IMG/VR virus record: IMGVR_UViG_3300023235_000008
Location: 124,001-188,000 of that record
DNA length: 64,000 nt
Direction: 5' to 3' (one strand)
The notes below the pieces were generated by a model that was given only the letters and a program-made list of their open reading frames with translations, was not told the origin of the DNA and did not search any database. The position numbers and the translations under genes were made by a program. Below are positions 32,956-63,613 of this stretch, piece after piece; positions within the stretch are counted from its first letter, which is position 1, and each line of letters opens with the position of its first letter.

Positions 32956-35900
32956 TTATTCCGCTAACAAAGTTCTTTTAGCAACAAGATATTGTGCCTG
33001 AAGCGTGCTGCTATTCTGTAATCCCTGACCGTCAGCTGCTGTGCCGTCACCACTTGTATACCATACTTGGGTATGGGTATTGCCGGGGATTTGCTGTCCA
33101 CTTACGTCAAAAACATTGCTACCTAATGCGTGAACGCTTTTAGCACCAGTTCCTTGTGTTCCACGACGAAGGCGACTGACTGTATTCGCATCAGTATCTC
33201 TTTCCCAATACGTAATACGCTCACCCGCAATCATTAAGAAACCGGGAACGCCAGAATCAGTATCAGGTGGTGCAAGACTTGTGGCATTTTCCACATAAAT
33301 CACATCATCTTCAAGTGTAAACTCTTGAACAAGGGTAGTTGTATTGTCTTGTGTGATACGATAATATTCAGTGTTACCAAGCATATCGTTGAAAATACGG
33401 AAGCCTGTTGACGGCTGTGATATTTTTTCACTAAATCCAGACACTACGATAATACTACTTGCGGTTAACGTTGTTGAATCGGCGATGATAATCTCACTAC
33501 CAAGAACACTGTAATCTACCGCACTATGCAGCTTTGTCCCGTCCACTGTAACCCATAGGTAATCGGTGTTAGTAACTGGACGGTCTAGAGTAAAGCGTTG
33601 TTCTGTGCCGACACCCTTAAACACATTGGTTTGAATACGCTGTGGATCGTGATTTGCAAACTGAACAATACGAATAATATCATCTGCCGCAAGTGTAACG
33701 CCAGCATCAATAGTAAGGGTTGTTCCATCACTGCTTACAGTATATTCTGCATCGGTAGTAATGCCGATAACAACCGTATCCTGCGTGGTTGGTGTTCTAG
33801 CCGCAGAATCATCGCCGATAAAGGTTATTGAACGAATAGAACTGCCATCATATGCATTGGTTGTATAATCCTGCCCAGCCACCAAGTTTCTATATTGATC
33901 TACAGATTGGTCATATATGCCAACAATGATATCACTATTTTGAACCAAAGCTTGAGTTTCTTGTGCGGATGTAGGAACATTAAACGTAATGGTGTTACCA
34001 TCGCCGCTATAATAAACCGCATTTGCTGGCCGCAATCTCGAACCATTTACTTCAACAATCATATTTGCTTCAAATGGTTTTGCATACAGTGAAGTATTAT
34101 CAAGAGTAATAACTCGGGTTGAACCGTCGCTTGTTTCAAGCTGTTCAGTAACTTCGGAGAATGCCTGACGTACATCAGGATCAACATCATATAGAACAAT
34201 ATGAACGTGCTGACCTGCTGTCGGGGTAGATGAAAGAACAACGTCAATAAAGTTTCCATTGACAACGATATTCGGGTTAAGACTTCTAACGCCATCTACC
34301 AGAACATATCCCTGTTCTACAACATCGGGATCAATAGGAACCGTAAAGGTATCCGTTATGCCATCTGCGGTAAAGCTTTTTTCAGCTACTGGATTTTCAC
34401 CCGTGTTACTAAACGAATATATATAAATAGTGTCATTTGATACGGGCACTGACACGAAGGTAACAATGCCGTTCGTGTAATCCACCGTAAAGTCGATGTC
34501 TTGGTATTGAACGCCACCAAGCGCAGTCCACACAAATATATTATCAACATCTTCAACCGATGAGCTGCCTTTGTAACCAAATGAGGCTGTTGAACCGTCA
34601 CTCACGTGAAATTCTGTATATATACGGGCTGCATTGCCGTCAAATTCTTGATCTTGCCCCGGTAACGTAAACACTTTAAGGTCGAGCGTATCGAACATTA
34701 TGCCCGGAACAAATTCCTCTGGAGAGTGTGAGTTATATACATCGATGTATTTTCCACCAACAATATCAATATCTTCTGGCGCAACACCCAATGCTGCATC
34801 GGAATAAGTTGAACGGATAATACTATCAATTGAACTTGCGCCACTGATAACGGCAATACCATTCTCGTCAATTTCAAATGCGTCAAATTCCTCAACATCA
34901 AATGCCCCCACATCAAAACCGGGATTTGCATTGAAATCTGGACCATATACTCGGACACCGGGGTAGTCTGTTCCGATTTGTAGCTGGGTTATATCGTTGC
35001 CGATCATTCCTTCAGTCGGTGTGTAATAAGCGGCTATTCTATCTGCTGCGCTAGTAAAGTCGCCATCTGCATAAACCGTGAGATTAGATGCATCGAAAGT
35101 GGCACTACTTGTGTAATCAGCAACAACTTCATACGCTTCACCAAGATAAGAAATAATCTGTGCGGCAGTATAAGCAGTATTTGCTTCCCATTCGACGATA
35201 TCGGATGAATATGCAATTCGATCAAACTTCAATATTGAATCAAATTCACGTACTTTGCCGTTAGTTAGTTGCAGATATATTTCAAGCCCTGTGCCCACGC
35301 CATCTATTTCAACGGTAGGAGTAGTTGTATACCCATTACCCTCATTGATAACTGTTAGCTGCGTAATCACACTGCCGTTGGTTTTTGCTTCAATTATAGC
35401 ACCTGAACCGCCGCCGCCAGTAACTGTTAATACGGGCGGAATTGTATACCCAATACCACTATTAAGAAGGATTGTAGACCCGACTGAATACCCATAGTTA
35501 TCGCCCCAAGGAACATTAAGACCTTGTTCCCAAAGTGCAAAATCGCTTGCTTTTTCACCAGATGGTTTGCGATAATAACCAAGGTCTGAATCGAAATAAC
35601 TGTGTACGTCGAAATCTGTCACATCACCATTCCACGGATCATCCTTGGTATATTCTAAAATATATTCACGAACATTTGTACGATACGGTTTGGCTTCGGC
35701 AATATAATCACTGATGTAATCTTGGTTATCACGCTGATAACTAGGATATTGATCAAGACCACGCAGTTTTTGCACAACCTTGATAAACGATGTCTTGATT
35801 AACCAGTCAGCATAAGGCTGTTCGGTTAGTAGATATTCAACCATAGTGAACCACAGACGATTCCATTCAACACGAATGTCTTCAACGAAGATATCGTTTT

Positions 35901-38900
35901 TAACTGCCTCAACTATTTGTCTAATCTCAGTGGTAGGTAGTTTATCAAACAATGAATTATCGAACGCCGAATTGTCAAAACCGATAACTTCAACCGTATT
36001 ATCATATAGTGAAGGAAGAAATTCAATAGTTCCATCTTCAACGACAACTTCTTCAAAACTTCCGTCTTCGTTAAATTGCACGATGCTTTCAACGCCCAGA
36101 TCGTTACTCTTAATCTTTACTAGCTCTCCCGCACTTAAAGTATCGGAAATAGCATTTAAGTCTTGTTCAGTCTCGACCGCAAATGTTACCACGGTGTTTT
36201 CATTAAATCCATCTGCATACCAAGTCGTTTTCTGCCAATAATTGTTGGTATCATATGCCTGAATGCGAGTTAAAATCCATGTATTATCGCTTTGTTTTTC
36301 ATATATTGACCATAAGTTATCATAATTTTCATCGCCCAAGACGAGAACCTTATATCCATTTGCGTAAATTGCAGGATTTAAATATGATAACTCAGCAAAA
36401 GTATCAACGCTTTCTGCCCAAGCACCACTGCGTTCACCGGGAATAGGGTCAGCCGATTCAATTCGGGATAGATCAAATTGATTAGCAATCTGATATTTTC
36501 CGAATACTTCATTACAGAATGTAACAAATAATTCCAATGCAGTGGTTCTATCAACAAACATTGTTTGGCGTGGACGATATAGAACACCATAGCGTTCAGC
36601 CACACTCAAGCCTCGCTGCGGCACTGAATCGCCATTGGAGTTCGTTGCTGCAAGACTGTCAACAAATTTGTTATAAATTTTATCAGCGATAACACTGGTC
36701 GAATCGCCTTCAGCCACTAACTGATATTCACTATGCAGAACGTTGCTGTTCTTAATAACATCATAATTTATATGGAGAACAGTGTTATTGTCTTCAATAT
36801 TTTCAGCGAGGTTATATGCAATAATTGAATTGCTTTTAATAACTGAAAGGAATTTTAACCCGTAAGTTTTTGGATTATCAATAATACGTGCGACTGTAGA
36901 AGAATCCAACTTGCGGAACCCAACATTAGGCGCACTTGTTTTATCTTTTACCCAGAAATAATATTTAGTTGTAGCAATTCCCGTGTTATTATTAAATGAC
37001 ACTCTTTCAGTATAACTAGAGTCATCTGCAAATTTAGGTGTTCCGTCGCCCGAATACACGCTCGGTAATGTGTTACTTTCTACCCATTCATAAACATCGG
37101 TCGATGAGCCGGGGAATTTAGCGGCCCATTGAGATGCACGATAGTCTAACTCACCTTGCTCATAATCTACGTATCGAACAGTAGATACATCCCACCATAG
37201 CTTACCAACGTGATTAATGCCCCAAGGTGAACGAGTATTAAGAATATTAGTCGTGATTGTATTAACATTATATGATGCGGGATCACGCTCGGTAGTATAT
37301 GCTAATTCTTGTTGAGCCAATCCAGATACCTTACCCTTTGCAGGATCAATCCAGTCAAGATACTCAATAATTTCGTTGTTTCGGCGACTATAAATGAATG
37401 CTTTGTTAAACAAACTTACATCAATCTTATCATCCTCGCCTCGAATATCTACCCATCCCTTATTAAGTGTTGGGTTTTCATACTCGTAAAATATACCAGA
37501 GTTTGTTAAGGTTGCTGTGTCATATTTCGGCGAACCGACAATAATCTTAGTATCACGTATATGAACAGAAGTGCCGAACTCATCGAACGATTCAATCGTT
37601 TCAGATTGTAACTGTTGCGTAAATCCAAACTGCGATGGATTATCGATGGTTTCATTCCAACTTGCCAATAAGTCATAAACATAAACCGCACCGCTTTGAA
37701 GTTCACGATCAAAGAAATACGTGCTATTATTATCAAACACTGTTGTCGCCAAATCATCAGCATCAACATCGAAACGTAATGTATTAATAGTAGATGCAAT
37801 CTTTGACCCAACAACAAGTGTATCACCAGCAGCATTTAAGTCTATTGCTAAACCAAAAGTTTCATTTTCTGCATTACGTGGATGTGAAATCTCCTGAATC
37901 TTAGTATAAGGCTCGATGCCAAGAGTTCCATACGTATTTCCCGTAAGTGGCATAACACGTAGTTTGTTATTTTCTATTTTACTTTCGGATACAATGGTTA
38001 ACCCATTGGTATCGGCAGCGGTAATGCCAGAAATACCTGCGTTATTAATATCAGAAACCAATGTGGTTAAGGTTGTTCCGGTCGTAGTAACCACAATGTC
38101 ATTGATTCTAATCTTGTCACCCGACGATATTGTTGGGCTTGATGTGCCTGTTACTGTTCCAAACTTCTTAGAACGATCCAAATACACAAAAACTGATCCC
38201 GTATTTGTCGTCACTCGGTCTTCGCCGGGGGAACCAATGGCAATCCAGTTGCCAGTAGTGTCGCTATTTATAACAACACTCGAACCATACAAATCAGAGT
38301 CGGTAGGATCGGTGCTTTGTAGTCGCTGAACTTGGACAAAGTTATTAACATCTATTTTCACAATAACATTTTCACTCGGTGCATTTCTAAACTCTACCGT
38401 ATTTCCAGTCAATGTATATTGACCGAACTGGGAATCATCCGATGTTAACGTCAAATCCACAGTATACGTTTGTATTTCATTATCAATATACACGCTTAAT
38501 GTGTTAACAGGCGGCAATGTTCCGCTAGGCGTAAATGTATCAGTCGTTCCGTCGCCGATGAAACTTTCTTTTGTTCTTTCGAATATATATGCAGCACCAG
38601 CGTTTGATAACACTGCGCTATCTGTGCCAAAGTATCTGCGATTAGGTGCGCCCGTCACTATAATAGTTCCGTCGCCATTCGTATCAATATTAGTTCCCAT
38701 AGCATCAGCCGCACGATCTTCGACATCAGCATTTCGTTCAATCGTTGAAATGTGGCGATACATTGGTATACGGCGCATAACATAATCGACACTATTTGTT
38801 AGTGTGAATGTGAAGTTTACTGTATTGCCAGAAACTGTAAAGTCTACATACGGAACAAGAATGCGTCCGTTACTATCAATAATTTGTAGATTGTCTTCGC

Positions 38901-41900
38901 TTTCTGGGAACCAGAATATAGACGCACTAGTTTTAATACCATCTCCGGCTTCAGTCTGAACAACTTCGTTTGATGATATAACGTCTTGCAGATTGTAAGC
39001 ATATATTTCACTACTGCCAGAAGCTCCGATATAAATCCATTTTTCGTCATTGCTAATAGCAACTGACTGACCGAACTTATCACCAGATGTTATGTTACTC
39101 GGACGCAATACCTGATTGATACTGAAAACGTTTCCAGTGCCTTTCTTATAGATAACCGCCATGCCTGTTTCAGAACTGGACAATGGCGCACCAACAACAA
39201 TATATTGCTCATCGCCAACATCCACACTTGTTCCAAAGCCATTAATACCAGTGACATCACTTGGATCAAATAATGCATTTTCAGTGAGGTCGTCGGTCGC
39301 TGTCTTAACGCAGTTTATTGCTTTACCTGTGCCGCTATTCGGAAGTCCTGCTACCGCCCATAGATTTTTTTCAGACGATGCAAAGCTTGTGCCGAGATTG
39401 TCATTACCAGATACGCCACCGTATGTAATATTATTACTGAAATCCCACGGAGATTGCTTCTCTAAGACTTGCCATTTACCATCGGCGTCATTTTCAAGCC
39501 ACACTTTTTCTTTAGTCTGCCATCCGTATATTGGATTAAATGATGCGATATCTTTCGGCTCATCATATTTAATAGATTCAAGCGTGAACAATAGTCCATC
39601 AATATTTTCTAAGTCTATTCCGCTTGCATCTACCGTAACAACAAATTCCACATTCGATACAATACTGTCTACACGATAGAATCCATCTACCGAAGAAGTA
39701 TTACGCATTACAACAAAATCATTCGTTGTTAAGTTGTGTGATTTTGATGTTGTTACTTTAATCTGGTTATCCAGAATATCGATCACATTAGTAACCCTAT
39801 TAGCTGTTTCGGAAACACGATAAACATCCCATACACCAGCGGTATTTCGGGCGGTCCATATCGTATATCCAGAACCGACAAACTCCGCATTCAAATCAGC
39901 AACATTGGCGATATCGAAAATGGTTACATCAATGTCTGAAAGACGAGGGAATCCAGCATACGTTATATCTTTCTTAGTATCAGTGCTGCCTGAACGGGTC
40001 GTAAACATATCCTTCGAATATTCATTAGGGGTTTTGTATAAGTCGTCTTCAATATAACTAATGTGCTGCGGGCGTGTATCACCATTGTCTAAAAATTCAA
40101 TAAGTTCTGGGTTAGAAACAAACTCATTCTCGTTAAGTTCAATTTCAATAACTTGGTTGGCATCAATCGCACCATATTCACCAACACGAAATCCCCATTC
40201 TTCGAAGAAATTAATATCGGAATCTTGGTTGTCAAGCTGGGCACGAATTAGTTTATCGATAGATGACGCCGTTCCTTTTTGTTTAATCATTCCCTGATAA
40301 AACTTAACCTGTGAAACATCATCGAGTTCTAGATTTTCAAGATAGTCTCGTTTTTGGTATCCGATAAGACCCTTACCGTATCTATCAAAGATTCCTTCGT
40401 TGTTAACGGAATCCATATTATAAAAATCACCAAAAATAGATGCAGCCGTATCAAGGTTAGGTCTTAACCCAGTCTTTATATTATCAGCAATGCGCCAAAA
40501 CTCTTGTTCAAATGTCTGTCTAGCATCTTGTGCCTTGATAGCAACCCACGTTTTCTTACGGAAGATTGCGAAATCGCCTCGCTTATAATCAACGCCCGGT
40601 GACCACGTTTTAGTAACAGGTTGATTGAAAATATATCCCGGTGCCTGAAATGATCCATCCCAGTTACTCGTCTTTGTACCGATAAGCTTTAAACGGAATT
40701 GACGTGAACCCAACTCTGGAAGATAGATAATGTCATTGAATACTGTGCGATTATTGAAAACAATCGTGTGTTCATATTGGACAGGATTAACTTCAAGTAA
40801 GTAAATAGGTCCAGCCGTATCGGTTGCTTGAACTGTAAATAAGTTATCAATACGCGATACTTTAAGTTGGGTGAATCGAATAGGCTTCAAGTTTTGATTC
40901 AATACTTTATACTGAAGTCCATCGCCGGCAAGATCATCAGGAACTGTTCCGAATAAATTAAACGTCACTTTATCGGATACGGGGTTAAGCGTAATAGTTG
41001 CACCGTTTTCCCAACCCTGCGATTGCCAGAAAAGGTATTCTTTTGCAGACAAAATCCAGTCTTTGGATAATGCACCATTCGTTTCTTCTAGTTGTTCATT
41101 AAATACAAACCCACGTAATTCTAAATATCGCTGATACGATACAAAGAAATCAACTACCTGCTGTGTGTTAGTAAATTCTGTGTTGTACGGTACACGAATT
41201 ACTTCATTGCGGAAATCGTTATAAACGATGGCTCGCACACCGCCGGTATTAATCTGATAGTTATTATCGGTAATGCTACTCGGAATAATATCAAAGTATG
41301 GATTCTCGATATCGTAGCCACGAACTGCCCAACCGTTATTTGTTTTTTCAATGATAACACCGCTCAATGATACCCTCGCTATCGGGGCAGATTTTGTCAG
41401 TTCAATATCGAAGTCATCGTCTGGCACAAATATGCCTTTGTTTGTTGAAGTCGGCGAAACCTGTTCAGCCAGAACTTTCAAGAAACGCTTGTCAGTATAT
41501 CCACCCACTCGATAAACAAGCTGAAGTTCAAGTGCACGAATAACTTTAATAATGTTATCTAACGAAACGTTTTTATGTCTTGCCCAATCTGATACAAACT
41601 GCGAAATACCATTCACTCGATTGACAGTTCCATTAGTTTCTGTTCCGTGAAGAACGATATCTGAACTAGTAATGCGCTTCAATGTATGACGATCAACAAT
41701 CTGATCAAGCGATTTATCACGAACAATATTACCAGAATCGAAACGGGTGGCTGCAAATTTACTTGGTCGTGTCAATGCAGATAGTTTCATTATCGCATAT
41801 GGATACTCACTTGATCTTCTCCAAGCCGCTTCGGCTGGACCAACATCGCCAAATACAAAGCTTTCCTCGACATAGGTGGTATTGTATGCACCTACGACTG

Positions 41901-44900
41901 ATTGTAACGGATCGGCAAGATTACCAGTGGCATCTACGGGTATAAAGCTTTTCAAATCAGGTCGGACGAAATCTGCTAAAATAGTAAAGTCGGTGCCCGC
42001 AACATCTTGATATAGCTTTCCATCACGTAGGTCTTCCCACATAACTTCGTTGCCCTTTGTGTAAGGCGCAATACCGTAACGATCATCCCACCAAGTAGGC
42101 TTTTCGCTTTGCCCCAGCATTTCCCAAGGGTGACTATGTGGGCGGTCAGTATCGTAGAAATAACGATAAATTCCACGCCAGTGACCCGGTAACAAATCAC
42201 CATCTATTTTATCTTGAAAATTAGACCAATTCCACGTAAACTTGTCAGCAACGTCAAATCCAATTTGTGCCGAGTAATCAACCTTATTGACAATCGCCCA
42301 ATTTAAGAAACCAAGACTTAAAATACTATCAACTTCTTCACGAGTATAATCACTGTCACGGAATTTACCGGGAAGAAGTTCATTGACATCGAATACATCT
42401 GTGGTATAAGTTGTCTTAATATTGTTATAAATTCTTTTTTCAAATTCAAGTATAATGTCGTCGCGACTATCGTTGAATGCCACAAAAATACTACCATCGT
42501 GTCCTTGGATAACTGTCTTCGGCGTGCGGTATGTATCGTCAGTGTAAATCTCTGGTCTAAACTTCGGATATAACCCCATTTTTGTAGGCGTAGGCGGAAT
42601 AAAACTTCCGTCCGTATTTGAATAATCAATAATCTCAATGATATCGTCTACTGCCAACACAAATCCATCATCAAAGGTAATATTTGCGCCAACGGTATCA
42701 AATACAAAATCCGTGCCAACATAAATCTGAACACCGTTATGATATACTAATACAGAGCGATTGCTGATATCATTGATATCAAAGAATAGTCCGTAGTCAT
42801 ATGTTCTAATATCTGGGTTCTCGATTGCATATATAGCAGTCGCGGCATCTTCACCATATCCAAGCATATCACTATAAAAGAACGGGAATGTTTCCGATTT
42901 GCCAATTTTTAGTTCATTGATAACTGCATCCAGTGCGGCGGGGATATCATCAAAATTTAAATCCATCGTGCTAATAGCATCATATAATTTTTGTTTATAC
43001 TTACTATATTCACGGCGGGAATAATCAATTGATCTGATTATACTCGAATCATGAACGTGGGTATTGTTATCCTTATTAATACTGCCGTTGTTTAGCAGAA
43101 ATGCGCCTAAATGTGCGCCCGCACTATGCTGAAGAATATTACCAGCATAACTTTTTAAATTAGTAACATCACGCAGATTACTATTACCCGGCGAATTACC
43201 AAAGAATGTAGTTGAGTTATTACTAGCGATGGTAATGTGATTGCGGATTTGTCCAAGTGTAAGCGTAGTAAACTCGGTGTTTGTTGCGTTATTTTCCAAG
43301 TTTGATGGAATTTCATAGTAACCGAAATCAGGCTGAACATCAGAATATGCACGAATAACAATGTAATCATCCACGTCAGCCGGTGCAGCTAATACAACAA
43401 AAAAGTTCCCATCCTGCTCCAACGTAGTATATTCAGGTTCAATAAAGTTAGTGACATTTTGTGTAGTATCACGTTTCAGTAGTTTGCTATTTTTATATAC
43501 GAATAGATTAACCACATCGTTCTCATTCTTAGGAATGGTGGGTGATTGAAATACCTGTGTCTCATCGGCAGTTACGAGGTATTCCTGAATAGAGAACTGG
43601 CGGGTATTTCTATTAACTTTCGTCCAGTCGTTCTTGATTTCATCCGTATCTCTGTCAATAATTTTATGAACAAAGCCATCATTAATCTTGGTTGTTTCAA
43701 TAATATTGCTTGGTGAATAAGTGAACGCATCACGAACGTAGTTGTTTTCAAAAATTATATCGCCGACATTTTCGAAGTTTTTGTAGCTTAATCCAAATCC
43801 AAGAACAGGGTCTTCCACTGCGGCTGGCTGTTGCTGATAGCTAAACAATCTAGTTCCAGTGAAACCTGTTCCAAAATATACGCTTTCATCACCAAAACTA
43901 TTTCCAGACGTATCGAAAATATCGAAATATGGGGTTTGATTAATATTGGTTTTTTGCTGGGATTCTAACCACACATCATCATTATAATAAAACACAATAC
44001 CCTGTCTTGTGGCACCATTGGAAATAAGAATAACATCGTCGTTGGTGGCATCACCAACTTCTGTCAAATGAAGTTGAAATTCATCGTCTGAATCAGTATC
44101 AATAAAGGATACCTCATATATTTTACTACGCACCAATGGATCACGGTCAGCACCAAAGATAACGGTTGTTCCACCTAATAACGGAATACCATCCACGAAG
44201 TAACCTGACTGACCTTCAACATTTGACAATGCATCAATCTGCGTTTCGTCAAATACATTAACAACTCGATTAAAAATCTTACCATAGTTGAATAGTTGTA
44301 AATCTGGTTCAAATTCAATGATAGGACGATTAGCTCGTTTGTCTTGATCGACAATAAAATTAAAGTCATTATATGCAGCTGTTTTTTCAATCACATCAAT
44401 GTGGAACCAACGGTTTGAACGTGACCAAGCATTGCGGTCAACGGATGAACGATTTATTGTGAAATAATCAACCTCTAGTGGCGCATTAGCAGAGCCAGCC
44501 CAACCAGCACTGTCAAACGTTTCTGTATCAAATCCTTCTTCTTCGGTGGTCGTAAACGGCTCTGGAACAACCAAATCATCCACTGATACTAATCGAATGC
44601 CTCCTGTTTGACCGACTCCTTCTACGTAATATTCGTTACCCGCATATGAAACTGGGGTGACATCACTATTAAAATCAATCTTCATTCCATTCGTAAGTTC
44701 TACAGCATTTGGTGAAATATACTCGTTGCGTCCAATGATATCTTCGTCCACATTAATCGCAGGGACTTCATCCTGCTCAACCACATCAATAATACCGAAA
44801 CGCAACGGGTCAATGCCATCAGCATAAAAGAAGCGGGTTAATGGCGCAGTGATTACGGGAACAAGTTCAAGTTGCTGAACTGCATTTTTCCAAAGTTCTT

Positions 44901-46059
44901 TATTGCCAAATTCGCTACCTTTAAGAATAAAAATCTTTTCATCCTGCGGTATATTCAGAACACGAACAACAGTCATAATATCATTGGCATCAATGCTTAT
45001 TCTGTAAACGTCGTGTCGGTCTTCTAGGGAAATCGTATTTGTAGGATCAAAGGTACTTCCGTTAGCATCAAAGCCAACACCCTGCGTATCAAATAGTCCG
45101 CCCGCTTCCCAAATCTCTTCGTTTTGGTTTTCGTCAACATTATAAAAAACGATAGTAGCATTTTCAATTTCACGCTGATCAGTAATACCGTCAATACCAT
45201 CAGGATTATTAGCAATGAACGTAGTGAATACTTGGTTATGTATTTCTGTATAAGAAAAGCGAGTTGCAAAATCAACGTCATCGGTTTTTGTCATTCCAAT
45301 CCATTTATTTTGCGCATTTGCTGCTGGTACATTAAACGTTACTACGCCCACATCCTCGCCATTATTTTCAATACCTAGAATGTCACGGGTCGAAATGTTA
45401 TCTTGGATGTCTTTAAGACCATCTAATCCCGGCTCAGTCTGAATATAAAATGGAAACCCAAGTTGATCTACTGTGAACGTATATGAACCACCACGTGCAA
45501 TCTTAATAGTAGGGTTATTAACCGAGTTGCGATCATTTATAAAATACGAAGGTTCAATATCCACACGAGTTATGTCAAAATTTTCTTCGGAATCAATAAC
45601 GGAACTGAATACAGGAATAGAATCGGGTCCATTTGGTAACCAATAATATTGTGAAAAGTTAACAAACTTATCAAAATCAAAGAATGAAGACCAAGAATAA
45701 TATTCATTTTCAAATAGACGGTCGTGATTATTAGTATCACCGCCTTCTGCCTCAATGGCGTTGACCATATCAACATAATTTGTCAAAAACTCAACACGAT
45801 CACCACTCGTACCAGTTTCTGGAATTTCTTTAAATACTACACCCGGCTCAAGTTGATAATTCTGACGAGTATCAGATACTTCATTTACGTATTGGTCACC
45901 CGCAGAGAAAGACGGTGCAAATTTTCTACCGACAAAGGCATTAATCTTTTCTTGAACACTAGGTGTTACAAGTTGGTCAATGGTTGCATTAAGAAATTTC
46001 TCGTTTTTTTCAGTTCTGAAAATCTCAGGTAATAATCCGATGGTTTTACGCAAAGCCAT
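32956..46059 (-). CDS. Giant (4367 aa) baseplate wedge/tail-associated structural protein
   Basis: RQNYQLEP, DKFVNFSQYYW, FG-x-SV propeller-like repeats, GDG-x-T-x-x-F repeats, KPYRT, LRRGTQGT; follows the gp6-like gene. Confidence 0.8.
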   Translation of the reverse strand: MALRKTIGLLPEIFRTEKNEKFLNATIDQLVTPSVQEKINAFVGRKFAPSFSAGDQYVNEVSDTRQNYQLEPGVVFKEIPETGTSGDRVEFLTNYVDMVNAIEAEGGDTNNHDRLFENEYYSWSSFFDFDKFVNFSQYYWLPNGPDSIPVFSSVIDSEENFDITRVDIEPSYFINDRNSVNNPTIKIARGGSYTFTVDQLGFPFYIQTEPGLDGLKDIQDNISTRDILGIENNGEDVGVVTFNVPAANAQNKWIGMTKTDDVDFATRFSYTEIHNQVFTTFIANNPDGIDGITDQREIENATIVFYNVDENQNEEIWEAGGLFDTQGVGFDANGSTFDPTNTISLEDRHDVYRISIDANDIMTVVRVLNIPQDEKIFILKGSEFGNKELWKNAVQQLELVPVITAPLTRFFYADGIDPLRFGIIDVVEQDEVPAINVDEDIIGRNEYISPNAVELTNGMKIDFNSDVTPVSYAGNEYYVEGVGQTGGIRLVSVDDLVVPEPFTTTEEEGFDTETFDSAGWAGSANAPLEVDYFTINRSSVDRNAWSRSNRWFHIDVIEKTAAYNDFNFIVDQDKRANRPIIEFEPDLQLFNYGKIFNRVVNVFDETQIDALSNVEGQSGYFVDGIPLLGGTTVIFGADRDPLVRSKIYEVSFIDTDSDDEFQLHLTEVGDATNDDVILISNGATRQGIVFYYNDDVWLESQQKTNINQTPYFDIFDTSGNSFGDESVYFGTGFTGTRLFSYQQQPAAVEDPVLGFGLSYKNFENVGDIIFENNYVRDAFTYSPSNIIETTKINDGFVHKIIDRDTDEIKNDWTKVNRNTRQFSIQEYLVTADETQVFQSPTIPKNENDVVNLFVYKNSKLLKRDTTQNVTNFIEPEYTTLEQDGNFFVVLAAPADVDDYIVIRAYSDVQPDFGYYEIPSNLENNATNTEFTTLTLGQIRNHITIASNNSTTFFGNSPGNSNLRDVTNLKSYAGNILQHSAGAHLGAFLLNNGSINKDNNTHVHDSSIIRSIDYSRREYSKYKQKLYDAISTMDLNFDDIPAALDAVINELKIGKSETFPFFYSDMLGYGEDAATAIYAIENPDIRTYDYGLFFDINDISNRSVLVYHNGVQIYVGTDFVFDTVGANITFDDGFVLAVDDIIEIIDYSNTDGSFIPPTPTKMGLYPKFRPEIYTDDTYRTPKTVIQGHDGSIFVAFNDSRDDIILEFEKRIYNNIKTTYTTDVFDVNELLPGKFRDSDYTREEVDSILSLGFLNWAIVNKVDYSAQIGFDVADKFTWNWSNFQDKIDGDLLPGHWRGIYRYFYDTDRPHSHPWEMLGQSEKPTWWDDRYGIAPYTKGNEVMWEDLRDGKLYQDVAGTDFTILADFVRPDLKSFIPVDATGNLADPLQSVVGAYNTTYVEESFVFGDVGPAEAAWRRSSEYPYAIMKLSALTRPSKFAATRFDSGNIVRDKSLDQIVDRHTLKRITSSDIVLHGTETNGTVNRVNGISQFVSDWARHKNVSLDNIIKVIRALELQLVYRVGGYTDKRFLKVLAEQVSPTSTNKGIFVPDDDFDIELTKSAPIARVSLSGVIIEKTNNGWAVRGYDIENPYFDIIPSSITDNNYQINTGGVRAIVYNDFRNEVIRVPYNTEFTNTQQVVDFFVSYQRYLELRGFVFNEQLEETNGALSKDWILSAKEYLFWQSQGWENGATITLNPVSDKVTFNLFGTVPDDLAGDGLQYKVLNQNLKPIRFTQLKVSRIDNLFTVQATDTAGPIYLLEVNPVQYEHTIVFNNRTVFNDIIYLPELGSRQFRLKLIGTKTSNWDGSFQAPGYIFNQPVTKTWSPGVDYKRGDFAIFRKKTWVAIKAQDARQTFEQEFWRIADNIKTGLRPNLDTAASIFGDFYNMDSVNNEGIFDRYGKGLIGYQKRDYLENLELDDVSQVKFYQGMIKQKGTASSIDKLIRAQLDNQDSDINFFEEWGFRVGEYGAIDANQVIEIELNENEFVSNPELIEFLDNGDTRPQHISYIEDDLYKTPNEYSKDMFTTRSGSTDTKKDITYAGFPRLSDIDVTIFDIANVADLNAEFVGSGYTIWTARNTAGVWDVYRVSETANRVTNVIDILDNQIKVTTSKSHNLTTNDFVVMRNTSSVDGFYRVDSIVSNVEFVVTVDASGIDLENIDGLLFTLESIKYDEPKDIASFNPIYGWQTKEKVWLENDADGKWQVLEKQSPWDFSNNITYGGVSGNDNLGTSFASSEKNLWAVAGLPNSGTGKAINCVKTATDDLTENALFDPSDVTGINGFGTSVDVGDEQYIVVGAPLSSSETGMAVIYKKGTGNVFSINQVLRPSNITSGDKFGQSVAISNDEKWIYIGASGSSEIYAYNLQDVISSNEVVQTEAGDGIKTSASIFWFPESEDNLQIIDSNGRILVPYVDFTVSGNTVNFTFTLTNSVDYVMRRIPMYRHISTIERNADVEDRAADAMGTNIDTNGDGTIIVTGAPNRRYFGTDSAVLSNAGAAYIFERTKESFIGDGTTDTFTPSGTLPPVNTLSVYIDNEIQTYTVDLTLTSDDSQFGQYTLTGNTVEFRNAPSENVIVKIDVNNFVQVQRLQSTDPTDSDLYGSSVVINSDTTGNWIAIGSPGEDRVTTNTGSVFVYLDRSKKFGTVTGTSSPTISSGDKIRINDIVVTTTGTTLTTLVSDINNAGISGITAADTNGLTIVSESKIENNKLRVMPLTGNTYGTLGIEPYTKIQEISHPRNAENETFGLAIDLNAAGDTLVVGSKIASTINTLRFDVDADDLATTVFDNNSTYFFDRELQSGAVYVYDLLASWNETIDNPSQFGFTQQLQSETIESFDEFGTSVHIRDTKIIVGSPKYDTATLTNSGIFYEYENPTLNKGWVDIRGEDDKIDVSLFNKAFIYSRRNNEIIEYLDWIDPAKGKVSGLAQQELAYTTERDPASYNVNTITTNILNTRSPWGINHVGKLWWDVSTVRYVDYEQGELDYRASQWAAKFPGSSTDVYEWVESNTLPSVYSGDGTPKFADDSSYTERVSFNNNTGIATTKYYFWVKDKTSAPNVGFRKLDSSTVARIIDNPKTYGLKFLSVIKSNSIIAYNLAENIEDNNTVLHINYDVIKNSNVLHSEYQLVAEGDSTSVIADKIYNKFVDSLAATNSNGDSVPQRGLSVAERYGVLYRPRQTMFVDRTTALELFVTFCNEVFGKYQIANQFDLSRIESADPIPGERSGAWAESVDTFAELSYLNPAIYANGYKVLVLGDENYDNLWSIYEKQSDNTWILTRIQAYDTNNYWQKTTWYADGFNENTVVTFAVETEQDLNAISDTLSAGELVKIKSNDLGVESIVQFNEDGSFEEVVVEDGTIEFLPSLYDNTVEVIGFDNSAFDNSLFDKLPTTEIRQIVEAVKNDIFVEDIRVEWNRLWFTMVEYLLTEQPYADWLIKTSFIKVVQKLRGLDQYPSYQRDNQDYISDYIAEAKPYRTNVREYILEYTKDDPWNGDVTDFDVHSYFDSDLGYYRKPSGEKASDFALWEQGLNVPWGDNYGYSVGSTILLNSGIGYTIPPVLTVTGGGGSGAIIEAKTNGSVITQLTVINEGNGYTTTPTVEIDGVGTGLEIYLQLTNGKVREFDSILKFDRIAYSSDIVEWEANTAYTAAQIISYLGEAYEVVADYTSSATFDASNLTVYADGDFTSAADRIAAYYTPTEGMIGNDITQLQIGTDYPGVRVYGPDFNANPGFDVGAFDVEEFDAFEIDENGIAVISGASSIDSIIRSTYSDAALGVAPEDIDIVGGKYIDVYNSHSPEEFVPGIMFDTLDLKVFTLPGQDQEFDGNAARIYTEFHVSDGSTASFGYKGSSSVEDVDNIFVWTALGGVQYQDIDFTVDYTNGIVTFVSVPVSNDTIYIYSFSNTGENPVAEKSFTADGITDTFTVPIDPDVVEQGYVLVDGVRSLNPNIVVNGNFIDVVLSSTPTAGQHVHIVLYDVDPDVRQAFSEVTEQLETSDGSTRVITLDNTSLYAKPFEANMIVEVNGSRLRPANAVYYSGDGNTITFNVPTSAQETQALVQNSDIIVGIYDQSVDQYRNLVAGQDYTTNAYDGSSIRSITFIGDDSAARTPTTQDTVVIGITTDAEYTVSSDGTTLTIDAGVTLAADDIIRIVQFANHDPQRIQTNVFKGVGTEQRFTLDRPVTNTDYLWVTVDGTKLHSAVDYSVLGSEIIIADSTTLTASSIIVVSGFSEKISQPSTGFRIFNDMLGNTEYYRITQDNTTTLVQEFTLEDDVIYVENATSLAPPDTDSGVPGFLMIAGERITYWERDTDANTVSRLRRGTQGTGAKSVHALGSNVFDVSGQQIPGNTHTQVWYTSGDGTAADGQGLQNSSTLQAQYLVAKRTLLAE

Positions 46060-60839: not shown

Positions 60840-61034
60840 ATGACTTCAACACTTTTAACACAACCAATAACACTCAGCTTATCAGATTATCGACCGATTA
60901 TCCGTGCGTGTATTGCCGTGCTTAAAGGTTGGGGTAGTATTCAATCAGAACATACAGCGCTACCCGTATATACACGATTTAATATGGATAAAAGCGCAAC
61001 GAGGGTTCAAGGAGATGGTGGAAGTTCATTCTAA
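60840..61034 (+). CDS. Putative leader peptide (64 aa) of the tRNA array
   Basis: Lies between promoters and a terminator; GAAAGAGA before the ATG; contains a complement of the terminator 5' arm. Confidence 0.55.
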   Translation: MTSTLLTQPITLSLSDYRPIIRACIAVLKGWGSIQSEHTALPVYTRFNMDKSATRVQGDGGSSF

Positions 61035-61063
61035 CACAAAATCTTAAAAACGAAAGTTTTACG

Positions 61064-61096
61064 AACCCTCTAAACCGCAAGTTTAGGGGGTTTTTT
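61064..61096 (+). terminator. Rho-independent terminator (candidate attenuator)
   Basis: AACCCTCTAAAC-CGCAA-GTTTAGGGGGTT followed by a T tract. Confidence 0.85.
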
Positions 61097-61115
61097 AATG
61101 AGCGTAAAAAAGATG

Positions 61116-61144
61116 TTGACAAAAAGATATAGGTAGAGTAATCT
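61116..61144 (+). promoter_or_regulatory. Possible sigma70 promoter
   Basis: TTGACA-N17-TAATCT. Confidence 0.5.
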
Positions 61145-61209
61145 ACTGAAGATAAGCAGTCAAGACCGGCGAACAACAAAGGTTGTTCAGATATATGGTA
61201 AGGCTGGCA

Positions 61210-61282
61210 CAGTAAAGAATAGCCCGTAAGGATACTAACTTTACTGCAGTAAAGAATAGCCCGTAAGGATACTAACTTTACT
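61210..61282. repeat. 36-bp exact tandem duplication of a hairpin
   Basis: cagtaaagaatagcccgtaaggatactaactttact at 61210-61245 and 61247-61282. Confidence 0.95.
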
Positions 61283-61341
61283 AAGCAGAGGTTCGAAGCG
61301 TTTACGTGGATTGCCAATCTAAAATGTTATGTGTGTTTTGT

Positions 61342-61416
61342 CAGGGTGTAGCTCAGTCTGGCCAGAGTGTCGGTCTTGGAGTCCGAAAGTCGCAGGTTCG
61401 AGTCCTGCCACCCTGA
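61342..61416 (+). tRNA. tRNA-Pro(TGG)
   Basis: Cloverleaf CAGGGTG/CACCCTG, TTCGAGT T-loop; no encoded CCA. Confidence 0.9.
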
Positions 61417-61435
61417 CAGAATACATATAGAGAGA

Positions 61436-61658
61436 ATATGGGCGGGTACGCAACACCGTAAGTCCCAGAGATTACGTGAGTTAACGGTCCACGCTGACAA
61501 TCGGGTTCACAGCATGAAATAGGGCAATCGGAATCAACCGTTATCGTCTTTATCTGTTATATTATAATAAATGTGAAGACCAATGGAAATCGGTATCACA
61601 GATAATATTGCAATAAACTTAATAGTTTCCCAATCGAAGGTGACGATAATATCCATAT
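61436..61658 (+). ncRNA. Unknown structured RNA, copy 1
   Basis: Closing stem ATATGGG/TCCATAT; 18-nt motif shared with copy 2. Confidence 0.45.
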
Positions 61659-61667
61659 AGATATTTA

Positions 61668-61833
61668 TACTAGGGGCAGCTTAAAGCGTAAGTCCCAGAG
61701 ATTAGTTACCCCGGTGGTCCTACGGTACGTTGTTTAACCGCTTCGTTATCATGGTCTAGCGTGGTCGCTAGGGTGAAACAGGCTGGGTAGTAAAATAGTG
61801 TGGTAACTATTTGAACCCCGTCCCTAGTAGCCA
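61668..61833 (+). ncRNA. Unknown structured RNA, copy 2, with GCCA 3' end
   Basis: Closing stem TACTAGGGG/TCCCTAGTA followed by GCCA. Confidence 0.55.
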
Positions 61834-61841
61834 AAAGTTTA

Positions 61842-61974
61842 GGATTGGTAGCTGAGAGGCACAGCGGCACCTTAATGGGTGTGTCGAAACATAAGCACGT
61901 AACAAACTCGCCGAGGACGCTCGAACGATAAGGTTACGCCTGTTACGTTGGTTCAAATCCAACCCAATCCACCA
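61842..61974 (+). ncRNA. tRNA-like RNA with ~64-nt variable region (Leu-TAA-like loop)
   Basis: GGATTGG/CCAATCC-ACCA, D arm, GTTGG-TTCAAAT-CCAAC T arm. Confidence 0.7.
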
Positions 61975-62058
61975 TTTCGCCAAGCGTATCTCGATACTGT
62001 CCGAATGCAGTACATAAGCAACGAATGTCGTTGATATTGGGACCGCTACTTTTTTTAA

Positions 62059-62134
62059 TCCCTACGGGCGAGCAAGCGAACGCACTGGTCTGTTAAACCA
62101 GCATTGCCTCGGGCGGTACGAGGGTAGGGAGCCA
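62059..62134 (+). tRNA. tRNA-Asn(GTT), atypical T-loop
   Basis: TCCCTAC/GTAGGGA-GCCA; CTGGT-CTGTTAA-ACCAG; T-loop GGCGGTA. Confidence 0.8.
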
Positions 62135-62344
62135 ATATATATTATCGTGGATGTCAGAAGCGTTTAAGCTTCGGGTATATTACAACTTTCGTCCCATGGG
62201 ATGGGTGCCGAAGTGATATATCTGCTGGTGTAAGCCCAGTGCCCACGCCTATTTAGTGACCGTTACAGACAGGTTTTGGCAACCTCTCATAAGCAATACT
62301 AGTAAAAGCTTTGGATGGGGAAACACCAAACGGCACTAATCCAG

Positions 62345-62476
62345 TTTGCGATAGCTTAATAACTCTTGGATAAGCGCACTAAGAGTAAAGCGTCTGGTAT
62401 TTCGCCAGAAGATGGTAAACGAAAGGAATAATGCATTATTCCAAGTAGTTGCGGCACTGACCACCTCGCAAAGCCA
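62345..62476 (+). ncRNA. tRNA-like RNA with hairpin insertions in the D- and T-loops
   Basis: TTTGCGA/TCGCAAA-GCCA; TCTGG-TATTTCG-CCAGA arm. Confidence 0.6.
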
Positions 62477-62641
62477 AACTTAGGGTAGAAGCAGCATTAT
62501 GCTCCCCTCCTTTATTAGCGTGAAAAACGGAGGTATTGCAGTTCGATTCTGCTGATCTTGTTCGTAAGAAAAATAGTGGTCTGTTGTGGGTAGCACCCAG
62601 CCTATGGTTTCGAATCCTTCACGCTATAGTAAATACCCACA

Positions 62642-62729
62642 CCAGAAGTTGGGCAGGTGGTGAGCCTCGGGGATTGTAAATCCCTCGCGTATGTATGCTT
62701 TAGAAGTTCGATTCTTCTCTTCTGGACCA
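62642..62729 (+). tRNA. tRNA-Tyr(GTA)
   Basis: CCAGAAG/CTTCTGG-ACCA; long variable arm. Confidence 0.9.
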
Positions 62730-62757
62730 ATTTTATTTAACAGACTAATTCAAATAA

Positions 62758-62835
62758 CTTCCCATCGTCTAGTCTGGTTTAGGACGCTGCCCTTTCAAGG
62801 CGGAAACACGAGTTCAAATCTCGTTGGGAAGACCA
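62758..62835 (+). tRNA. tRNA-Glu(TTC)
   Basis: CTTCCCA/TGGGAAG-ACCA; CTGCC-CTTTCAA-GGCGG. Confidence 0.9.
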
Positions 62836-62840
62836 ATTAA

Positions 62841-62920
62841 GGGGGCAGTGGTCTAAGTCAGGTTCAAGACGCCGGTATTCCATCATCGGAAACAGTGGTT
62901 CAAATCCACTCACCCCGCCA
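62841..62920 (+). tRNA. Degenerate or atypical tRNA (8-nt anticodon loop ATTCCATC, imperfect acceptor stem)
   Basis: D arm, AGTGG-TTCAAAT-CCACT T arm, GCCA end. Confidence 0.55.
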
Positions 62921-62996
62921 TATTTTGCGGAGCGTTTCCGTGTACCCGCTCCATTTTATATAGAGTTTCTTTGATTGTTTGTGATATAATCAAAGT

Positions 62997-63613
62997 ATGA
63001 ACACATGTAAAATATGCAATACACAGTTTATCAATAAACCTAAAACAACAGGTCTATACTGTTCAATCTCCTGTGGAAATCGCAGTAGAGGAAATAAACT
63101 AAGAGAACAAAATAAGACAATCTATGTTCCGTCATCTTGCAAACGCTGCGGTGATGACATTCCATATGAAAAAAGACGCAACACATTTTGCTCTAGTAAA
63201 TGTGCTGCTACAGGAAATACAAACAGAAGGTATCTTCATACATCATATGCAAAGAATGCAACGAGGCATACAAACCAAGACATTCGGTTTCATACTTTTG
63301 TAGCAAGGCATGTGAGATTGAGAATAGGCGAGGGGCTACTGAAAAGAAAATTAAAAAAGGGGCAGTCAGAGGTCGCCCGACATTAAAAAGATATCTTCTA
63401 CGAAAGAATGGACACTGCTGTGAAATGTGCAACGGGACGGAATGGATGGGCGAACCTATTCCACTCGAACTTGACCATATTAATGGCGATGCGGGTAACA
63501 ATATGCCCGACAACTTGCGATTATTATGCCCTAACTGCCATACTATAACACCATACTCAAATGGAAAAAATAGAGGCAATGGTAGAAAATCTCGTGGTGT
63601 CCCGCTAAACTAA
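62997..63613 (+). pseudogene. HNH homing-endonuclease-like gene split by a frameshift near 63220-63240
   Basis: CxxC/FCSxxC repeats in frame 1 continue in frame 2 into LELDHINGD…NLRLLCPNCH. Confidence 0.75.

What the first reader, a model, noticed from the sequence alone, without database searches (positions are those of the whole stretch)
61436..61833. Two paralogous unknown ncRNAs in the tRNA array
Seen: two non-coding blocks, each with a closing stem, share CGTAAGTCCCAGAGATTA exactly (61457-61474 and 61687-61704), followed by a GGTCC-containing hairpin and TGAAA(T/C)AGG (61515 and 61774). In copy 2, CCCAG can pair with CTGGG at 61783, and the RNA ends in GCCA like a tRNA. Inference: a structured RNA class with a conserved core and variable peripheral stems, processed by tRNA machinery; possibly a ribozyme or a protein decoy. 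I do not recognise it.
Basis: partly seen in the sequence, partly recalled or inferred. Interest (0 to 1): 0.7.

Follow-up and report, generated by a model that had tools for sequence, protein, structure and literature searches.

The report
Unknown small RNA in phage tRNA operon
A large T4-like phage from a salt lake carries, among its tRNA genes, a roughly 166-base gene for an unknown folded RNA that ends like a tRNA, plus a truncated second copy of its first part; this resembles the unexplained small RNAs of phage T4, and there is no expression data or known function.

Summary
The sequence features are real. The 18-mer CGTAAGTCCCAGAGATTA occurs exactly twice in the window and in the whole 230-kb phage contig. 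Both copies lie in an ORF-free stretch of a same-strand tRNA array.

Only copy 2 (X2, 61668-61833) looks like a discrete RNA gene. It has a 10-bp terminal helix followed directly by G-CCA, 8 nt before the next tRNA. This arrangement appeared in 4 of 300 shuffles.

Copy 1 shares only a ~75-nt 5' module with X2, in exact 230-nt register. It has no tRNA-like end and folds no better than shuffled sequence. It looks like a partial, probably decaying paralog.

One related phage lineage (RNA ligase 1 60% identical) has a single copy of the module, with 17 of 18 core bases identical. An unrelated 350-aa ORF replaces the rest.

No Rfam family matches, and there is no significant similarity to T4 RNAC/RNAD. 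No copy was found in eight other relatives or in cellular genomes. No RNA sequencing run was listed.

Two other non-tRNA RNAs in the same operon (W0 and Z) show compensatory changes against the relative, so such RNAs are credible here.

Best reading: X2 is a new family of small RNA embedded in a tRNA operon and cut out by tRNA-processing enzymes. Its function is unknown. A ribozyme role has no support.

The parts
61066..61098 (+). Intrinsic terminator-like hairpin (CCCTCTAAAC...GTTTAGGGGG followed by a T run). It ends the upstream small-ORF unit and marks the start of the RNA operon.
   Evidence: Read by eye. It is nearly identical in the relative L214. The consensus scan did not list it.
61118..61145 (+). 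Probable sigma-70-type promoter of the RNA operon: TTGACA, then AGTAAT 16 nt later. This is inferred.
   Evidence: Read by eye. L214 has TTAACA-16-TATACT at the aligned place. The scan did not list it.
61140..61316 (+). W0, the first non-tRNA structured RNA of the operon. It contains a 36-nt unit repeated in tandem (start-to-start spacing 37 nt) and ends in GTGGATTGCCA.
   Evidence: Repeat D1. 12 of 33 predicted pairs keep pairing through changes on both sides against L214.
61342..61417 (+). tRNA-Pro(UGG). Its 3' trailer leads into the first copy of the module.
   Evidence: Leader and trailer pair with each other (inverted repeat I1).
61419..61491 (+). X1 5' module, the stretch homologous to X2. 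It comprises the trailer box ATACATATAGA (61421-61431), GGG (61444-61446) pairing with CCC (61464-61466), the 18-mer, and GGTCC.
   Evidence: In-register ungapped alignment at offset 230. Repeats D3 and D10. nhmmer E 6e-13. Covariance model R1 scored 41.9 bits.
61457..61474 (+). 18-nt core, copy 1.
61436..61530 (+). X1 GC-rich block (48-57% GC). It has no CCA end and no supported closing stem.
61531..61660 (.). AT-rich spacer (27-35% GC) between X1 and X2. It has no counterpart in X2 or in L214.
61534..61669 (-). Minus-strand T4-late-promoter-like TATAAATA (61662-61669), 5 nt upstream of a 40-aa ORF with one hydrophobic segment (61534-61656). This may be a small inserted gene. It is unverified.
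61668..61833 (+). X2, a candidate 166-nt structured RNA with a four-way-junction (cloverleaf-like) predicted fold.
61668..61677 (+). 5' strand of the X2 terminal helix (TACTAGGGGC). The part ACTAGG-GC is conserved in L214.
61687..61704 (+). 18-nt core, copy 2. In the minimum-energy fold, CCCAG (61694-61698) pairs with CTGGG (61783-61787). Alternatively, CCC (61694-61696) pairs with GGG (61674-61676).
61774..61787 (+). TGAAACAGG followed by CTGGG. This is the 3' side of the internal loop and helix that face the core in the X2 fold.
61793..61812 (+). 7-bp hairpin (AAATAGT / ACTATTT, loop GTGGTA) in the position of a T-arm, but without T-loop sequence.
   Evidence: Pair probabilities 0.89-1.0.
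61820..61833 (+). 3' strand of the terminal helix (GTCCCTAGTA), then discriminator-like G61830 and the encoded CCA at 61831-61833.
61842..61974 (+). The next gene, 8 nt downstream: a tRNA-like gene carrying an insertion of about 55 nt.
   Evidence: Rfam tRNA model 40.8 bits. ARAGORN intron mode.

Best explanation
X2 (61668-61833) is a gene for a discrete, roughly 166-nt structured RNA that is not a tRNA.

Proposed route to the mature RNA (inferred):
- It is transcribed as part of a long polycistronic tRNA/RNA operon of a T4-like jumbo phage.
- Its 10-bp terminal helix followed by G-CCA mimics a tRNA acceptor end.
- RNase P would therefore cut at its 5' end, and 3' trimming would stop at CCA, releasing a stable RNA as happens for the neighbouring tRNAs.

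The conserved element:
- It is an 18-nt core, GUAAGUC(C/G)CAGAGAUU, within a ~45-75-nt 5' module.
- In X2 the core forms one face of an internal loop or junction, or alternatively a small local hairpin.
- It is most likely a binding surface for a partner, protein or RNA. The partner is unknown.

X1 is a partial paralog that keeps only the 5' module and is probably decaying.

The nearest functional analogy is T4 RNAC/RNAD: stable non-tRNA RNAs of the tRNA cluster whose role is still unknown.

Shown versus inferred:
- Shown: the sequence features, the genomic context, conservation in one other lineage, and the lack of any match to a known family.
- Inferred: transcription, processing, stability and function.
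For: - The 18-mer is exact in two copies, against 0.04 expected by chance.
- The region has no plausible ORFs and sits inside a same-strand array of tRNAs with no terminator.
- Most tRNAs of the array encode their own CCA, several as GCCA.
- X2's 10-bp terminal helix plus G-CCA has pair probability about 1.0. A comparable feature arose in only 4 of 300 shuffles of the ORF-free region.
- X2 ends 8 nt before the next tRNA, which is the usual spacing in this array.
- GC content is raised over X1 and X2 compared with the spacer.
- The syntenic relative L214 keeps the module right after its tRNA-Pro. It matches X2 at 84% over 45 nt, against about 65% for the flanks, and the core matches at 17 of 18.
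- The single core change (C to G) is matched by G to C in the upstream GGG. This is one compensatory pair.
- Two other non-tRNA RNAs of the same operon covary with their L214 homologs. W0 has 12 of 33 pairs changed on both sides. The block containing Z has 21 of 46, and Z has a conserved closing stem plus GCCA. Processed non-tRNA RNAs are therefore a feature of this operon.
Against: - No RNA sequencing run was listed, so transcripts and their ends are unknown.
- X2's folding energy is only marginally better than shuffles (z -1.4, with 17 of 200 shuffles as good).
- There are only three copies in two lineages. One compensatory pair is not significant (172 of 500 shuffles reach it).
- That pair supports a local GGG/CCC helix, which competes with both the CCCAG/CUGGG helix and the inner part of the terminal helix in the minimum-energy fold. 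Forcing it costs about 5 kcal/mol.
- L214 lacks the whole 3' two-thirds of X2, where an unrelated 350-aa ORF sits. The full X2 fold is therefore dispensable in that lineage, or the module works on its own.
- Helices of 7 bp followed by NCCA are common by chance in this array.
- DNA from several lake samples showed no variants inside X1 or X2, so population data add nothing.
Confidence: 0.42

Rival explanations
1. The functional unit is only the ~45-75-nt 5' module, made of the trailer box, a small hairpin and AGAGAUU. It would act in cis as a processing or spacer signal in the polycistronic precursor, for instance an RNase E-type cut next to a hairpin that separates the upstream unit from what follows. 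On this view the larger X2 fold is incidental.
For: - All three copies sit directly after the 3' trailer of the preceding unit: ATACATATA after tRNA-Pro in G000 and in L214, and ATCCATATAGA after X1.
- In L214 the module stands alone, in front of an ORF.
- The only compensatory change supports a local 3-bp helix inside the module.
- The invariant AG/AUU fits the RN|WUU RNase E preference. This comes from my own knowledge and was not tested here.
Against: - Processing sites rarely need 18 invariant bases.
- No such module follows any other tRNA of the 12-kb array or of eight related phages.
- X2's 10-bp helix plus G-CCA is unlikely by chance.
Confidence: 0.25
2. The repeat is a relic of DNA rearrangement. 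A partial tandem duplication or a mobile-DNA insertion into an ancestral X gene left a dead 5' fragment (X1) beside X2. The exact 18-mer would then reflect gene conversion, or a homing-endonuclease target kept by selection on DNA rather than by an RNA function of X1.
For: - The two copies are in exact 230-nt register, including the upstream trailer box.
- An AT-rich insert with its own late-promoter-like box and a small ORF separates them.
- In L214 an unrelated AT-rich ORF with TATAAATA is inserted about 20 nt after the core.
- The array carries HNH endonuclease genes, one of them broken, at 62997-63613.
- A strain variant in the lake samples appears to skip 61361-62139.
Against: - Outside the core the copies are too diverged for a recent duplication, yet the core is perfect.
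- The 350-aa ORF of L214 has no endonuclease domain in Pfam or PHROGs.
- This account explains X1. It does not explain X2's tRNA-like end.
Confidence: 0.15
3. X2 is a very derived tRNA gene that keeps the acceptor stem, the CCA and a four-way junction but has lost the D-loop and T-loop and gained a giant anticodon arm. It would be one of several degenerate tRNAs in this array.
For: - The predicted fold is a four-way junction with a terminal helix plus G-CCA.
- The array holds other aberrant tRNA-like genes. One is a pseudo-tRNA-Asn (62059-62134) with T-loop GGCGGUA, whose L214 homolog is a normal tRNA-Asn. Others are tRNAs with insertions of 35-80 nt.
Against: - The Rfam tRNA model gives no match even at E up to 10 on 424 bases, and ARAGORN with introns finds nothing.
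- X2 has no significant similarity to any tRNA or other sequence of the genome.
- The helix is 10 bp rather than 7, and 7 unpaired bases precede its 3' strand.
Confidence: 0.1
4. X1 and X2 are self-cleaving ribozymes.
For: None beyond a conserved core in a structured context. There is a superficial likeness of CCCAG-AGA...CUGGG to domain B of the hairpin ribozyme, which I recalled from memory.
Against: - No ribozyme family of Rfam matches at any threshold.
- X1 cannot form the helices that X2 forms.
Confidence: 0.03

Closest known systems
Phage T4 RNAC (species 1) and RNAD (species 2) RNAs
   Same: - They are small non-tRNA RNAs (139 and 119 nt) encoded inside the tRNA gene cluster of a T4-type phage, on the same strand as the tRNAs and next to a tRNA.
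- RNAD is followed by CCA-like ACCA.
- Their function was still unknown in the 2010 and 2022 literature (PMC3014915; PMC9697503).
   Different: - X1 and X2 have no significant sequence similarity to them. The shuffle test gives p values from 0.02 to 0.58 over four comparisons, none surviving correction for multiple tests.
- The shared GUAAGUC 7-mer is at chance level.
- RNAC has a canonical T-arm and X2 has none.
- Expression of X1 and X2 has not been shown.
tRNA
   Same: - Terminal helix followed by one base and CCA.
- Four-way-junction fold.
- Position and spacing within a tRNA array.
   Different: - X2 has no D-loop or T-loop signature and no 7-nt anticodon loop.
- It is 166 nt long, with a 10-bp helix.
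- Neither the Rfam tRNA model nor ARAGORN detects it.
Bacterial and phage Y RNA-like YrlA
   Same: A non-coding RNA with a tRNA-like part that RNase P can cut, found in some phages (PMC4201824). X1 and X2 contain GGUCC, reminiscent of the metazoan GGUCCGA motif.
   Different: - YrlA is defined by GNCGAAN0-1G near its 5' end, by near-invariant T and D stem-loops, and by a neighbouring Ro60 gene.
- None of these is present in X1 or X2. No TROVE gene was found in the 230 kb held, which is estimated 65% complete.
GOLLD and ROOL large RNAs
   Same: Unknown-function structured RNAs that often lie beside tRNAs in phages and prophages (PMC5737381).
   Different: - They are much larger, about 600-800 nt.
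- They did not match in Rfam.

Membership tests
Any Rfam 15 family | A covariance-model score at or above the family's gathering threshold | tested here: not met
   There were no hits in 61418-61841 at gathering thresholds. At E up to 10 the only hits were mir-2209 (14.1 bits against 70) and Ocean-VII (12.6 and 10.5 bits against 53.5). Ocean-VII hits of this size occur in every control genome.
tRNA | Cloverleaf with conserved D-loop and T-loop, detectable by the tRNA covariance model or ARAGORN | tested here: not met
tRNA | Acceptor helix followed by a discriminator base and CCA | tested here: met
   This holds for X2 only: helix 61668-61677 with 61820-61829, then G61830 and CCA at 61831-61833. 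X1 has no such end.
T4 RNAC/RNAD | Encoded in the tRNA cluster of a T4-type phage, on the same strand, non-coding | tested here: met
   The contig has T4-type capsid, baseplate and Rnl1 genes. X1 and X2 lie within the array.
T4 RNAC/RNAD | Sequence homology to T4 rnaC or rnaD | tested here: not met
   Local alignment against shuffles. MAFFT alignment A1.
T4 RNAC/RNAD | Accumulates as a stable processed RNA during infection | not testable with these tools
   No RNA run was listed.
YrlA / Y RNA | GNCGAAN0-1G motif, conserved T and D stem-loops, and an adjacent Ro60 (TROVE) gene | tested here: not met
   The motif and stem-loops are absent on reading the sequence. PF05731 is absent from the contig. 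There is no Rfam Y RNA hit.
tmRNA (standard or permuted) | tRNA-Ala-like domain plus a tag reading frame | tested here: not met
   ARAGORN finds none in G000, and Rfam gives no hit. The relative G002 does have a permuted tmRNA.
RNase P RNA | Conserved regions CR-I to CR-V and the P4 helix, detectable by the Rfam models | tested here: not met
   There are no RNase P hits at E up to 10. The AAGUCC likeness to CR-I was recalled from memory only.

The most novel reading that the evidence does not exclude
X2 may belong to a previously undescribed set of RNAs in the tRNA operons of environmental jumbo T4-like phages. The set would also include the covarying W0 and Z RNAs and the degenerate tRNA-Asn of the same operon. 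These RNAs keep a CCA tail and a cloverleaf-like topology, but no longer work in translation. They would keep the ends that tRNA enzymes recognise and serve another purpose, for example as decoys or sponges for host tRNA-targeting defence nucleases or for tRNA-binding proteins. The 18-nt core would be the recognition surface.
Probability: 0.1. Interest if true: 0.7.

Novelty: new variant of a known kind. Interest (0 to 1): 0.35.

Why it matters
T4's small RNAs from its tRNA cluster have had no known function for about fifty years. A second, unrelated family in the same kind of location would show that such RNAs recur among T4-like phages and are not a quirk of T4. It would also provide a new sequence to test, built around a short invariant core.

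The operon as a whole is the more useful lead. It carries at least three non-tRNA structured RNAs and several aberrant tRNAs, at a time when phage tRNA arrays are being linked to escape from host nucleases that cut tRNAs.

The evidence for X itself is thin: two lineages, no transcripts and no function.

Tried and rejected
- **Rfam.** I ran it at gathering and permissive thresholds on the window, on the 424-nt region alone and on the relative. Nothing matched; the Ocean-VII and mir-2209 hits are noise.
- **Exact and degenerate motif scans.**
  - IMG/VR, five scans of core motifs plus two of flanking-sequence anchors.
  - JGI metagenome contigs.
  - One genome for each of 185,579 prokaryote species.
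  - Only the contig itself and the L214 contig are true hits. All the rest are coding or chance matches, inspected.
- **blastn against 50,697 phage records.** Only tRNA-Pro matched.
- **Relatives found through the major capsid protein (75-78% identical), eight large contigs.** Neither BLAST nor the covariance model R1 found the module in any of them. The arrays of the two near-complete jumbo genomes, with 32-33 tRNAs each, were also checked by motif search and nhmmer.
- **Relatives found through Rnl1.** Only the P0002 lineage (L214-L216) is syntenic. The others had no DNA served or no tRNA array nearby.
- **T4 RNAC/RNAD homology.** Rejected.
- **Y RNA idea.** Rejected.
- **A base-pairing target for the core within either phage genome.** Nothing stood above background.
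- **Derivation from a tRNA, from another genome segment, or from W0, Z or the pseudo-tRNA.** No significant similarity.
- **Remnant of the L214 350-aa ORF in X1 or X2.** None found.
- **Population variation.** No variants inside X1 or X2.
- **RNA runs.** None was listed.
- **Ideas recalled from memory.** The likenesses to RNase P CR-I, the T-box, the K-turn and the hairpin ribozyme have no tool support.

Full report
**Where the window lies**

The window is bases 124001-188000 of a 230,059-base IMG/VR viral contig, which CheckV estimates to be 65% complete. DNA runs that hold the sequence are all salt-lake metagenomes.

The phage is T4-like. It has a Gp23-type major capsid protein, a baseplate wedge protein, an Rnl1/gp63-type RNA ligase and several radical-SAM genes.

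All tRNA genes of the contig lie in one same-strand array, at contig positions 185.3-197.6 kb. The finding sits at the start of this array.

Window 61030-63000 has no credible ORF on either strand. A terminator-like hairpin at 61066-61098 and a promoter-like TTGACA box at 61118 precede it. I read both by eye, and both are conserved in a relative. No terminator was found inside the array. The array is therefore most simply read as one polycistronic RNA operon, which is an inference.

**Checking the observation**

- The 18-mer is exact at 61457 and 61687. It has no other match in the window with up to 3 mismatches, against 0.04 expected, and none elsewhere in the contig.
- An ungapped comparison at offset 230 shows that the paralogy is limited to about 61419-61491 against 61649-61721.
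  - This stretch includes an 11-nt box, AT(A/C)CATATAGA, 36 nt upstream of the core, and GGTCC 13 nt downstream of it.
  - Beyond it, identity falls to the random level.
  - TGAAAYAGG is out of this register.
- Copy 2 (X2) has a 10-bp terminal helix (61668-61677 with 61820-61829) followed directly by G-CCA, with pair probabilities near 1.
  - A helix of at least 10 bp followed by NCCA arose in 4 of 300 shuffles of the ORF-free region.
  - Helices of 7-9 bp followed by NCCA are common by chance.
- X2 ends 8 nt before the next tRNA-like gene, at 61842.
- Copy 1 (X1) has no CCA and no supported closing stem. It folds no better than shuffled sequence.
- X1 is a GC-rich block (61436-61530) followed by an AT-rich spacer.
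- X2's total folding energy is only mildly better than shuffles (z -1.4).

**Comparison with known RNAs**

- Rfam gives nothing at gathering thresholds. At permissive thresholds there are only noise-level hits. The Ocean-VII hits of 10-13 bits recur in every control genome.
- ARAGORN finds no tRNA or tmRNA in the region, even with introns allowed.
- T4's RNAC and RNAD are the obvious precedent. They are small RNAs of unknown function inside the T4 tRNA cluster (PMC3014915; PMC9697503). X1 and X2 show no significant similarity to them.
- The Y RNA-like idea fails on its defining motif, on its stem-loops and on the absence of a Ro60 gene.

**Search for homologs**

- Exact and degenerate scans of IMG/VR, JGI metagenome contigs and 185,579 prokaryote genomes returned only chance or coding matches, plus one real relative.
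- A blastn search of the phage record collection found only tRNA-Pro.
- Phages with 75-78% identical capsid protein lack the element. Two of them are near-complete jumbo genomes (318 and 374 kb) with 32-33 tRNAs each.
- The one relative came through the neighbouring Rnl1 gene. Protein P0002 (60% identical) lies on a 45-kb JGI contig, L214. Two ENA contigs, L215 and L216, are identical to it in this region.
- L214 shares gene order with the window. Downstream of Rnl1 it has, in order:
  - the same terminator;
  - a promoter;
  - a W0 homolog;
  - a tRNA-Pro-like gene;
  - a single copy of the module, ATACATATACTAGGCGCAGCTTTCAAAGTGTAAGTCGCAGAGATT.
- The L214 module is 84% identical to the 5' end of X2 over 45 nt. 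The surrounding alignment is about 65% identical. Its core matches at 17 of 18.
- About 20 nt after the core in L214 come a T4-late-promoter-like TATAAATA and a 350-aa ORF. The ORF has no family match and no remnant in our contig.
- After that ORF the shared order resumes with tRNA-Asn, a conserved non-coding block and tRNA-Tyr. No 3' partner for the ACTAGG strand exists in L214.
- It follows that the X2-type 5' end adjacent to tRNA-Pro is ancestral to both lineages. L214 has lost or replaced the 3' two-thirds. In our phage the module is duplicated.

**Evidence on structure**

- The one substitution in the core (CCC to CGC) is matched by GGG to GCG upstream. This keeps a 3-bp helix that all three copies can form.
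- This is a single event. With three sequences, 172 of 500 shuffles reach it, so it is suggestive only.
- The helix competes with the CCCAG/CUGGG helix and with the inner terminal helix of the X2 minimum-energy fold. Forcing it costs about 5 kcal/mol.
- No complementary target for the core stands out in either phage genome.

**Context that makes X2 credible as an RNA gene**

- W0 (61140-61316) keeps 12 of 33 predicted pairs through changes on both sides against L214.
- The block 62135-62480 keeps 21 of 46 pairs in the same way. It includes Z (62345-62476), a 132-nt four-way-junction RNA. Its closing stem, TTTGCGA with TCGCAAA, is followed by GCCA, and the stem is conserved with one compensatory pair.
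- This operon therefore does encode CCA-tailed non-tRNA RNAs that are under structural selection.

**Interpretation**

- My best reading (confidence about 0.4): X2 is a discrete RNA released by tRNA-processing enzymes, and X1 is a partial paralog. The core is the constrained part and is probably a binding surface. The function is unknown.
- Main rival (about 0.25): the module alone is a cis-acting processing or spacer signal.
- Second rival (about 0.15): the repeat is a scar of duplication or mobile-DNA insertion. AT-rich ORF-bearing DNA lies just after the module in both lineages.
- A very derived tRNA (about 0.1) and a ribozyme (about 0.03) are less likely.
- No RNA run was listed. DNA runs from the lake show no variation inside X1 or X2.

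**Verdict**

This is a new, narrowly distributed family of a known kind, namely small non-tRNA RNAs in T4-type tRNA clusters. The evidence is thin and the interest moderate to low. The operon as a whole is more interesting than X alone.

Noticed in passing
window 61140-61316; L214 15419-15553: W0 is a roughly 177-nt non-tRNA RNA at the head of the operon, ending in GTGGATTGCCA. It holds a perfect tandem duplication of a 36-nt hairpin unit (61210-61245 and 61247-61282), of which L214 has one copy. 12 of 33 predicted pairs keep pairing through changes on both sides. It has no Rfam match.
   Followed up: partly
window 62135-62480, especially 62345-62476; L214 16851-17316: This conserved non-coding block contains Z, a 132-nt four-way-junction RNA with a 7-bp closing stem plus GCCA and many compensatory changes against L214. 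It has no Rfam match. A strain variant in two lake samples lacks 62256-62342.
   Followed up: partly
window 62059-62134: A tRNA-Asn(GUU)-like gene has a normal acceptor stem, anticodon loop (CUGUUAA) and GCCA end. Its T-loop is aberrant (GGCGGUA) and its D-loop lacks GG. Both ARAGORN and Rfam miss it. Its positional homolog in L214 (16773-16850) is a normal tRNA-Asn.
   Followed up: partly
window 61842-61974; contig G000 193816-193982, 195734-195889 and 197509-197627 (beyond the window end): Several tRNA genes carry insertions of 35-80 nt. Two tRNA-Ile(UAU) genes have homologous insertions of about 80 nt in the anticodon loop, too short for a group I intron. The gene at 197509-197627 has a homolog with a similar insertion in relative G002 (L210 19680-19812).
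   Followed up: no
window 61534-61669, minus strand: An exact T4-late-promoter consensus, TATAAATA, lies 5 nt upstream of a 40-aa ORF (MDIIVTFDWETIKF...) with one hydrophobic segment. It sits in the AT-rich spacer between X1 and X2. There is no Shine-Dalgarno sequence.
   Followed up: no
window 62997-63613: An HNH endonuclease gene inside the array is broken into two overlapping ORFs (62997-63386 and 63200-63613). Read in one frame, it has three stop codons.
   Followed up: no
L214 15714-16782: In the relative, a 350-aa AT-rich ORF with no family match sits behind TATAAATA. It takes the place of X2's 3' part and the following tRNA. The G000 contig has only very weak paralogs of it (E about 0.01).
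   Followed up: partly
L210 13482-13915 (relative G002, 318 kb): ARAGORN calls a permuted tmRNA (tag AANADSYELVA) inside the tRNA array of a related jumbo phage. None is found in the window's contig.
   Followed up: no
window 62477-62641: About 165 nt between Z and tRNA-Tyr have no counterpart in L214. They contain T-arm-like pieces (GCAGTTCGATTCTGC and GGTTTCGAATCC) without a full tRNA, and may be tRNA remnants.
   Followed up: no
window 32956-46059, minus strand: A 4367-aa ORF lies next to the baseplate wedge gene. Its L214 homolog (4541 aa) has FG-GAP and carbohydrate-binding hits.
   Followed up: no
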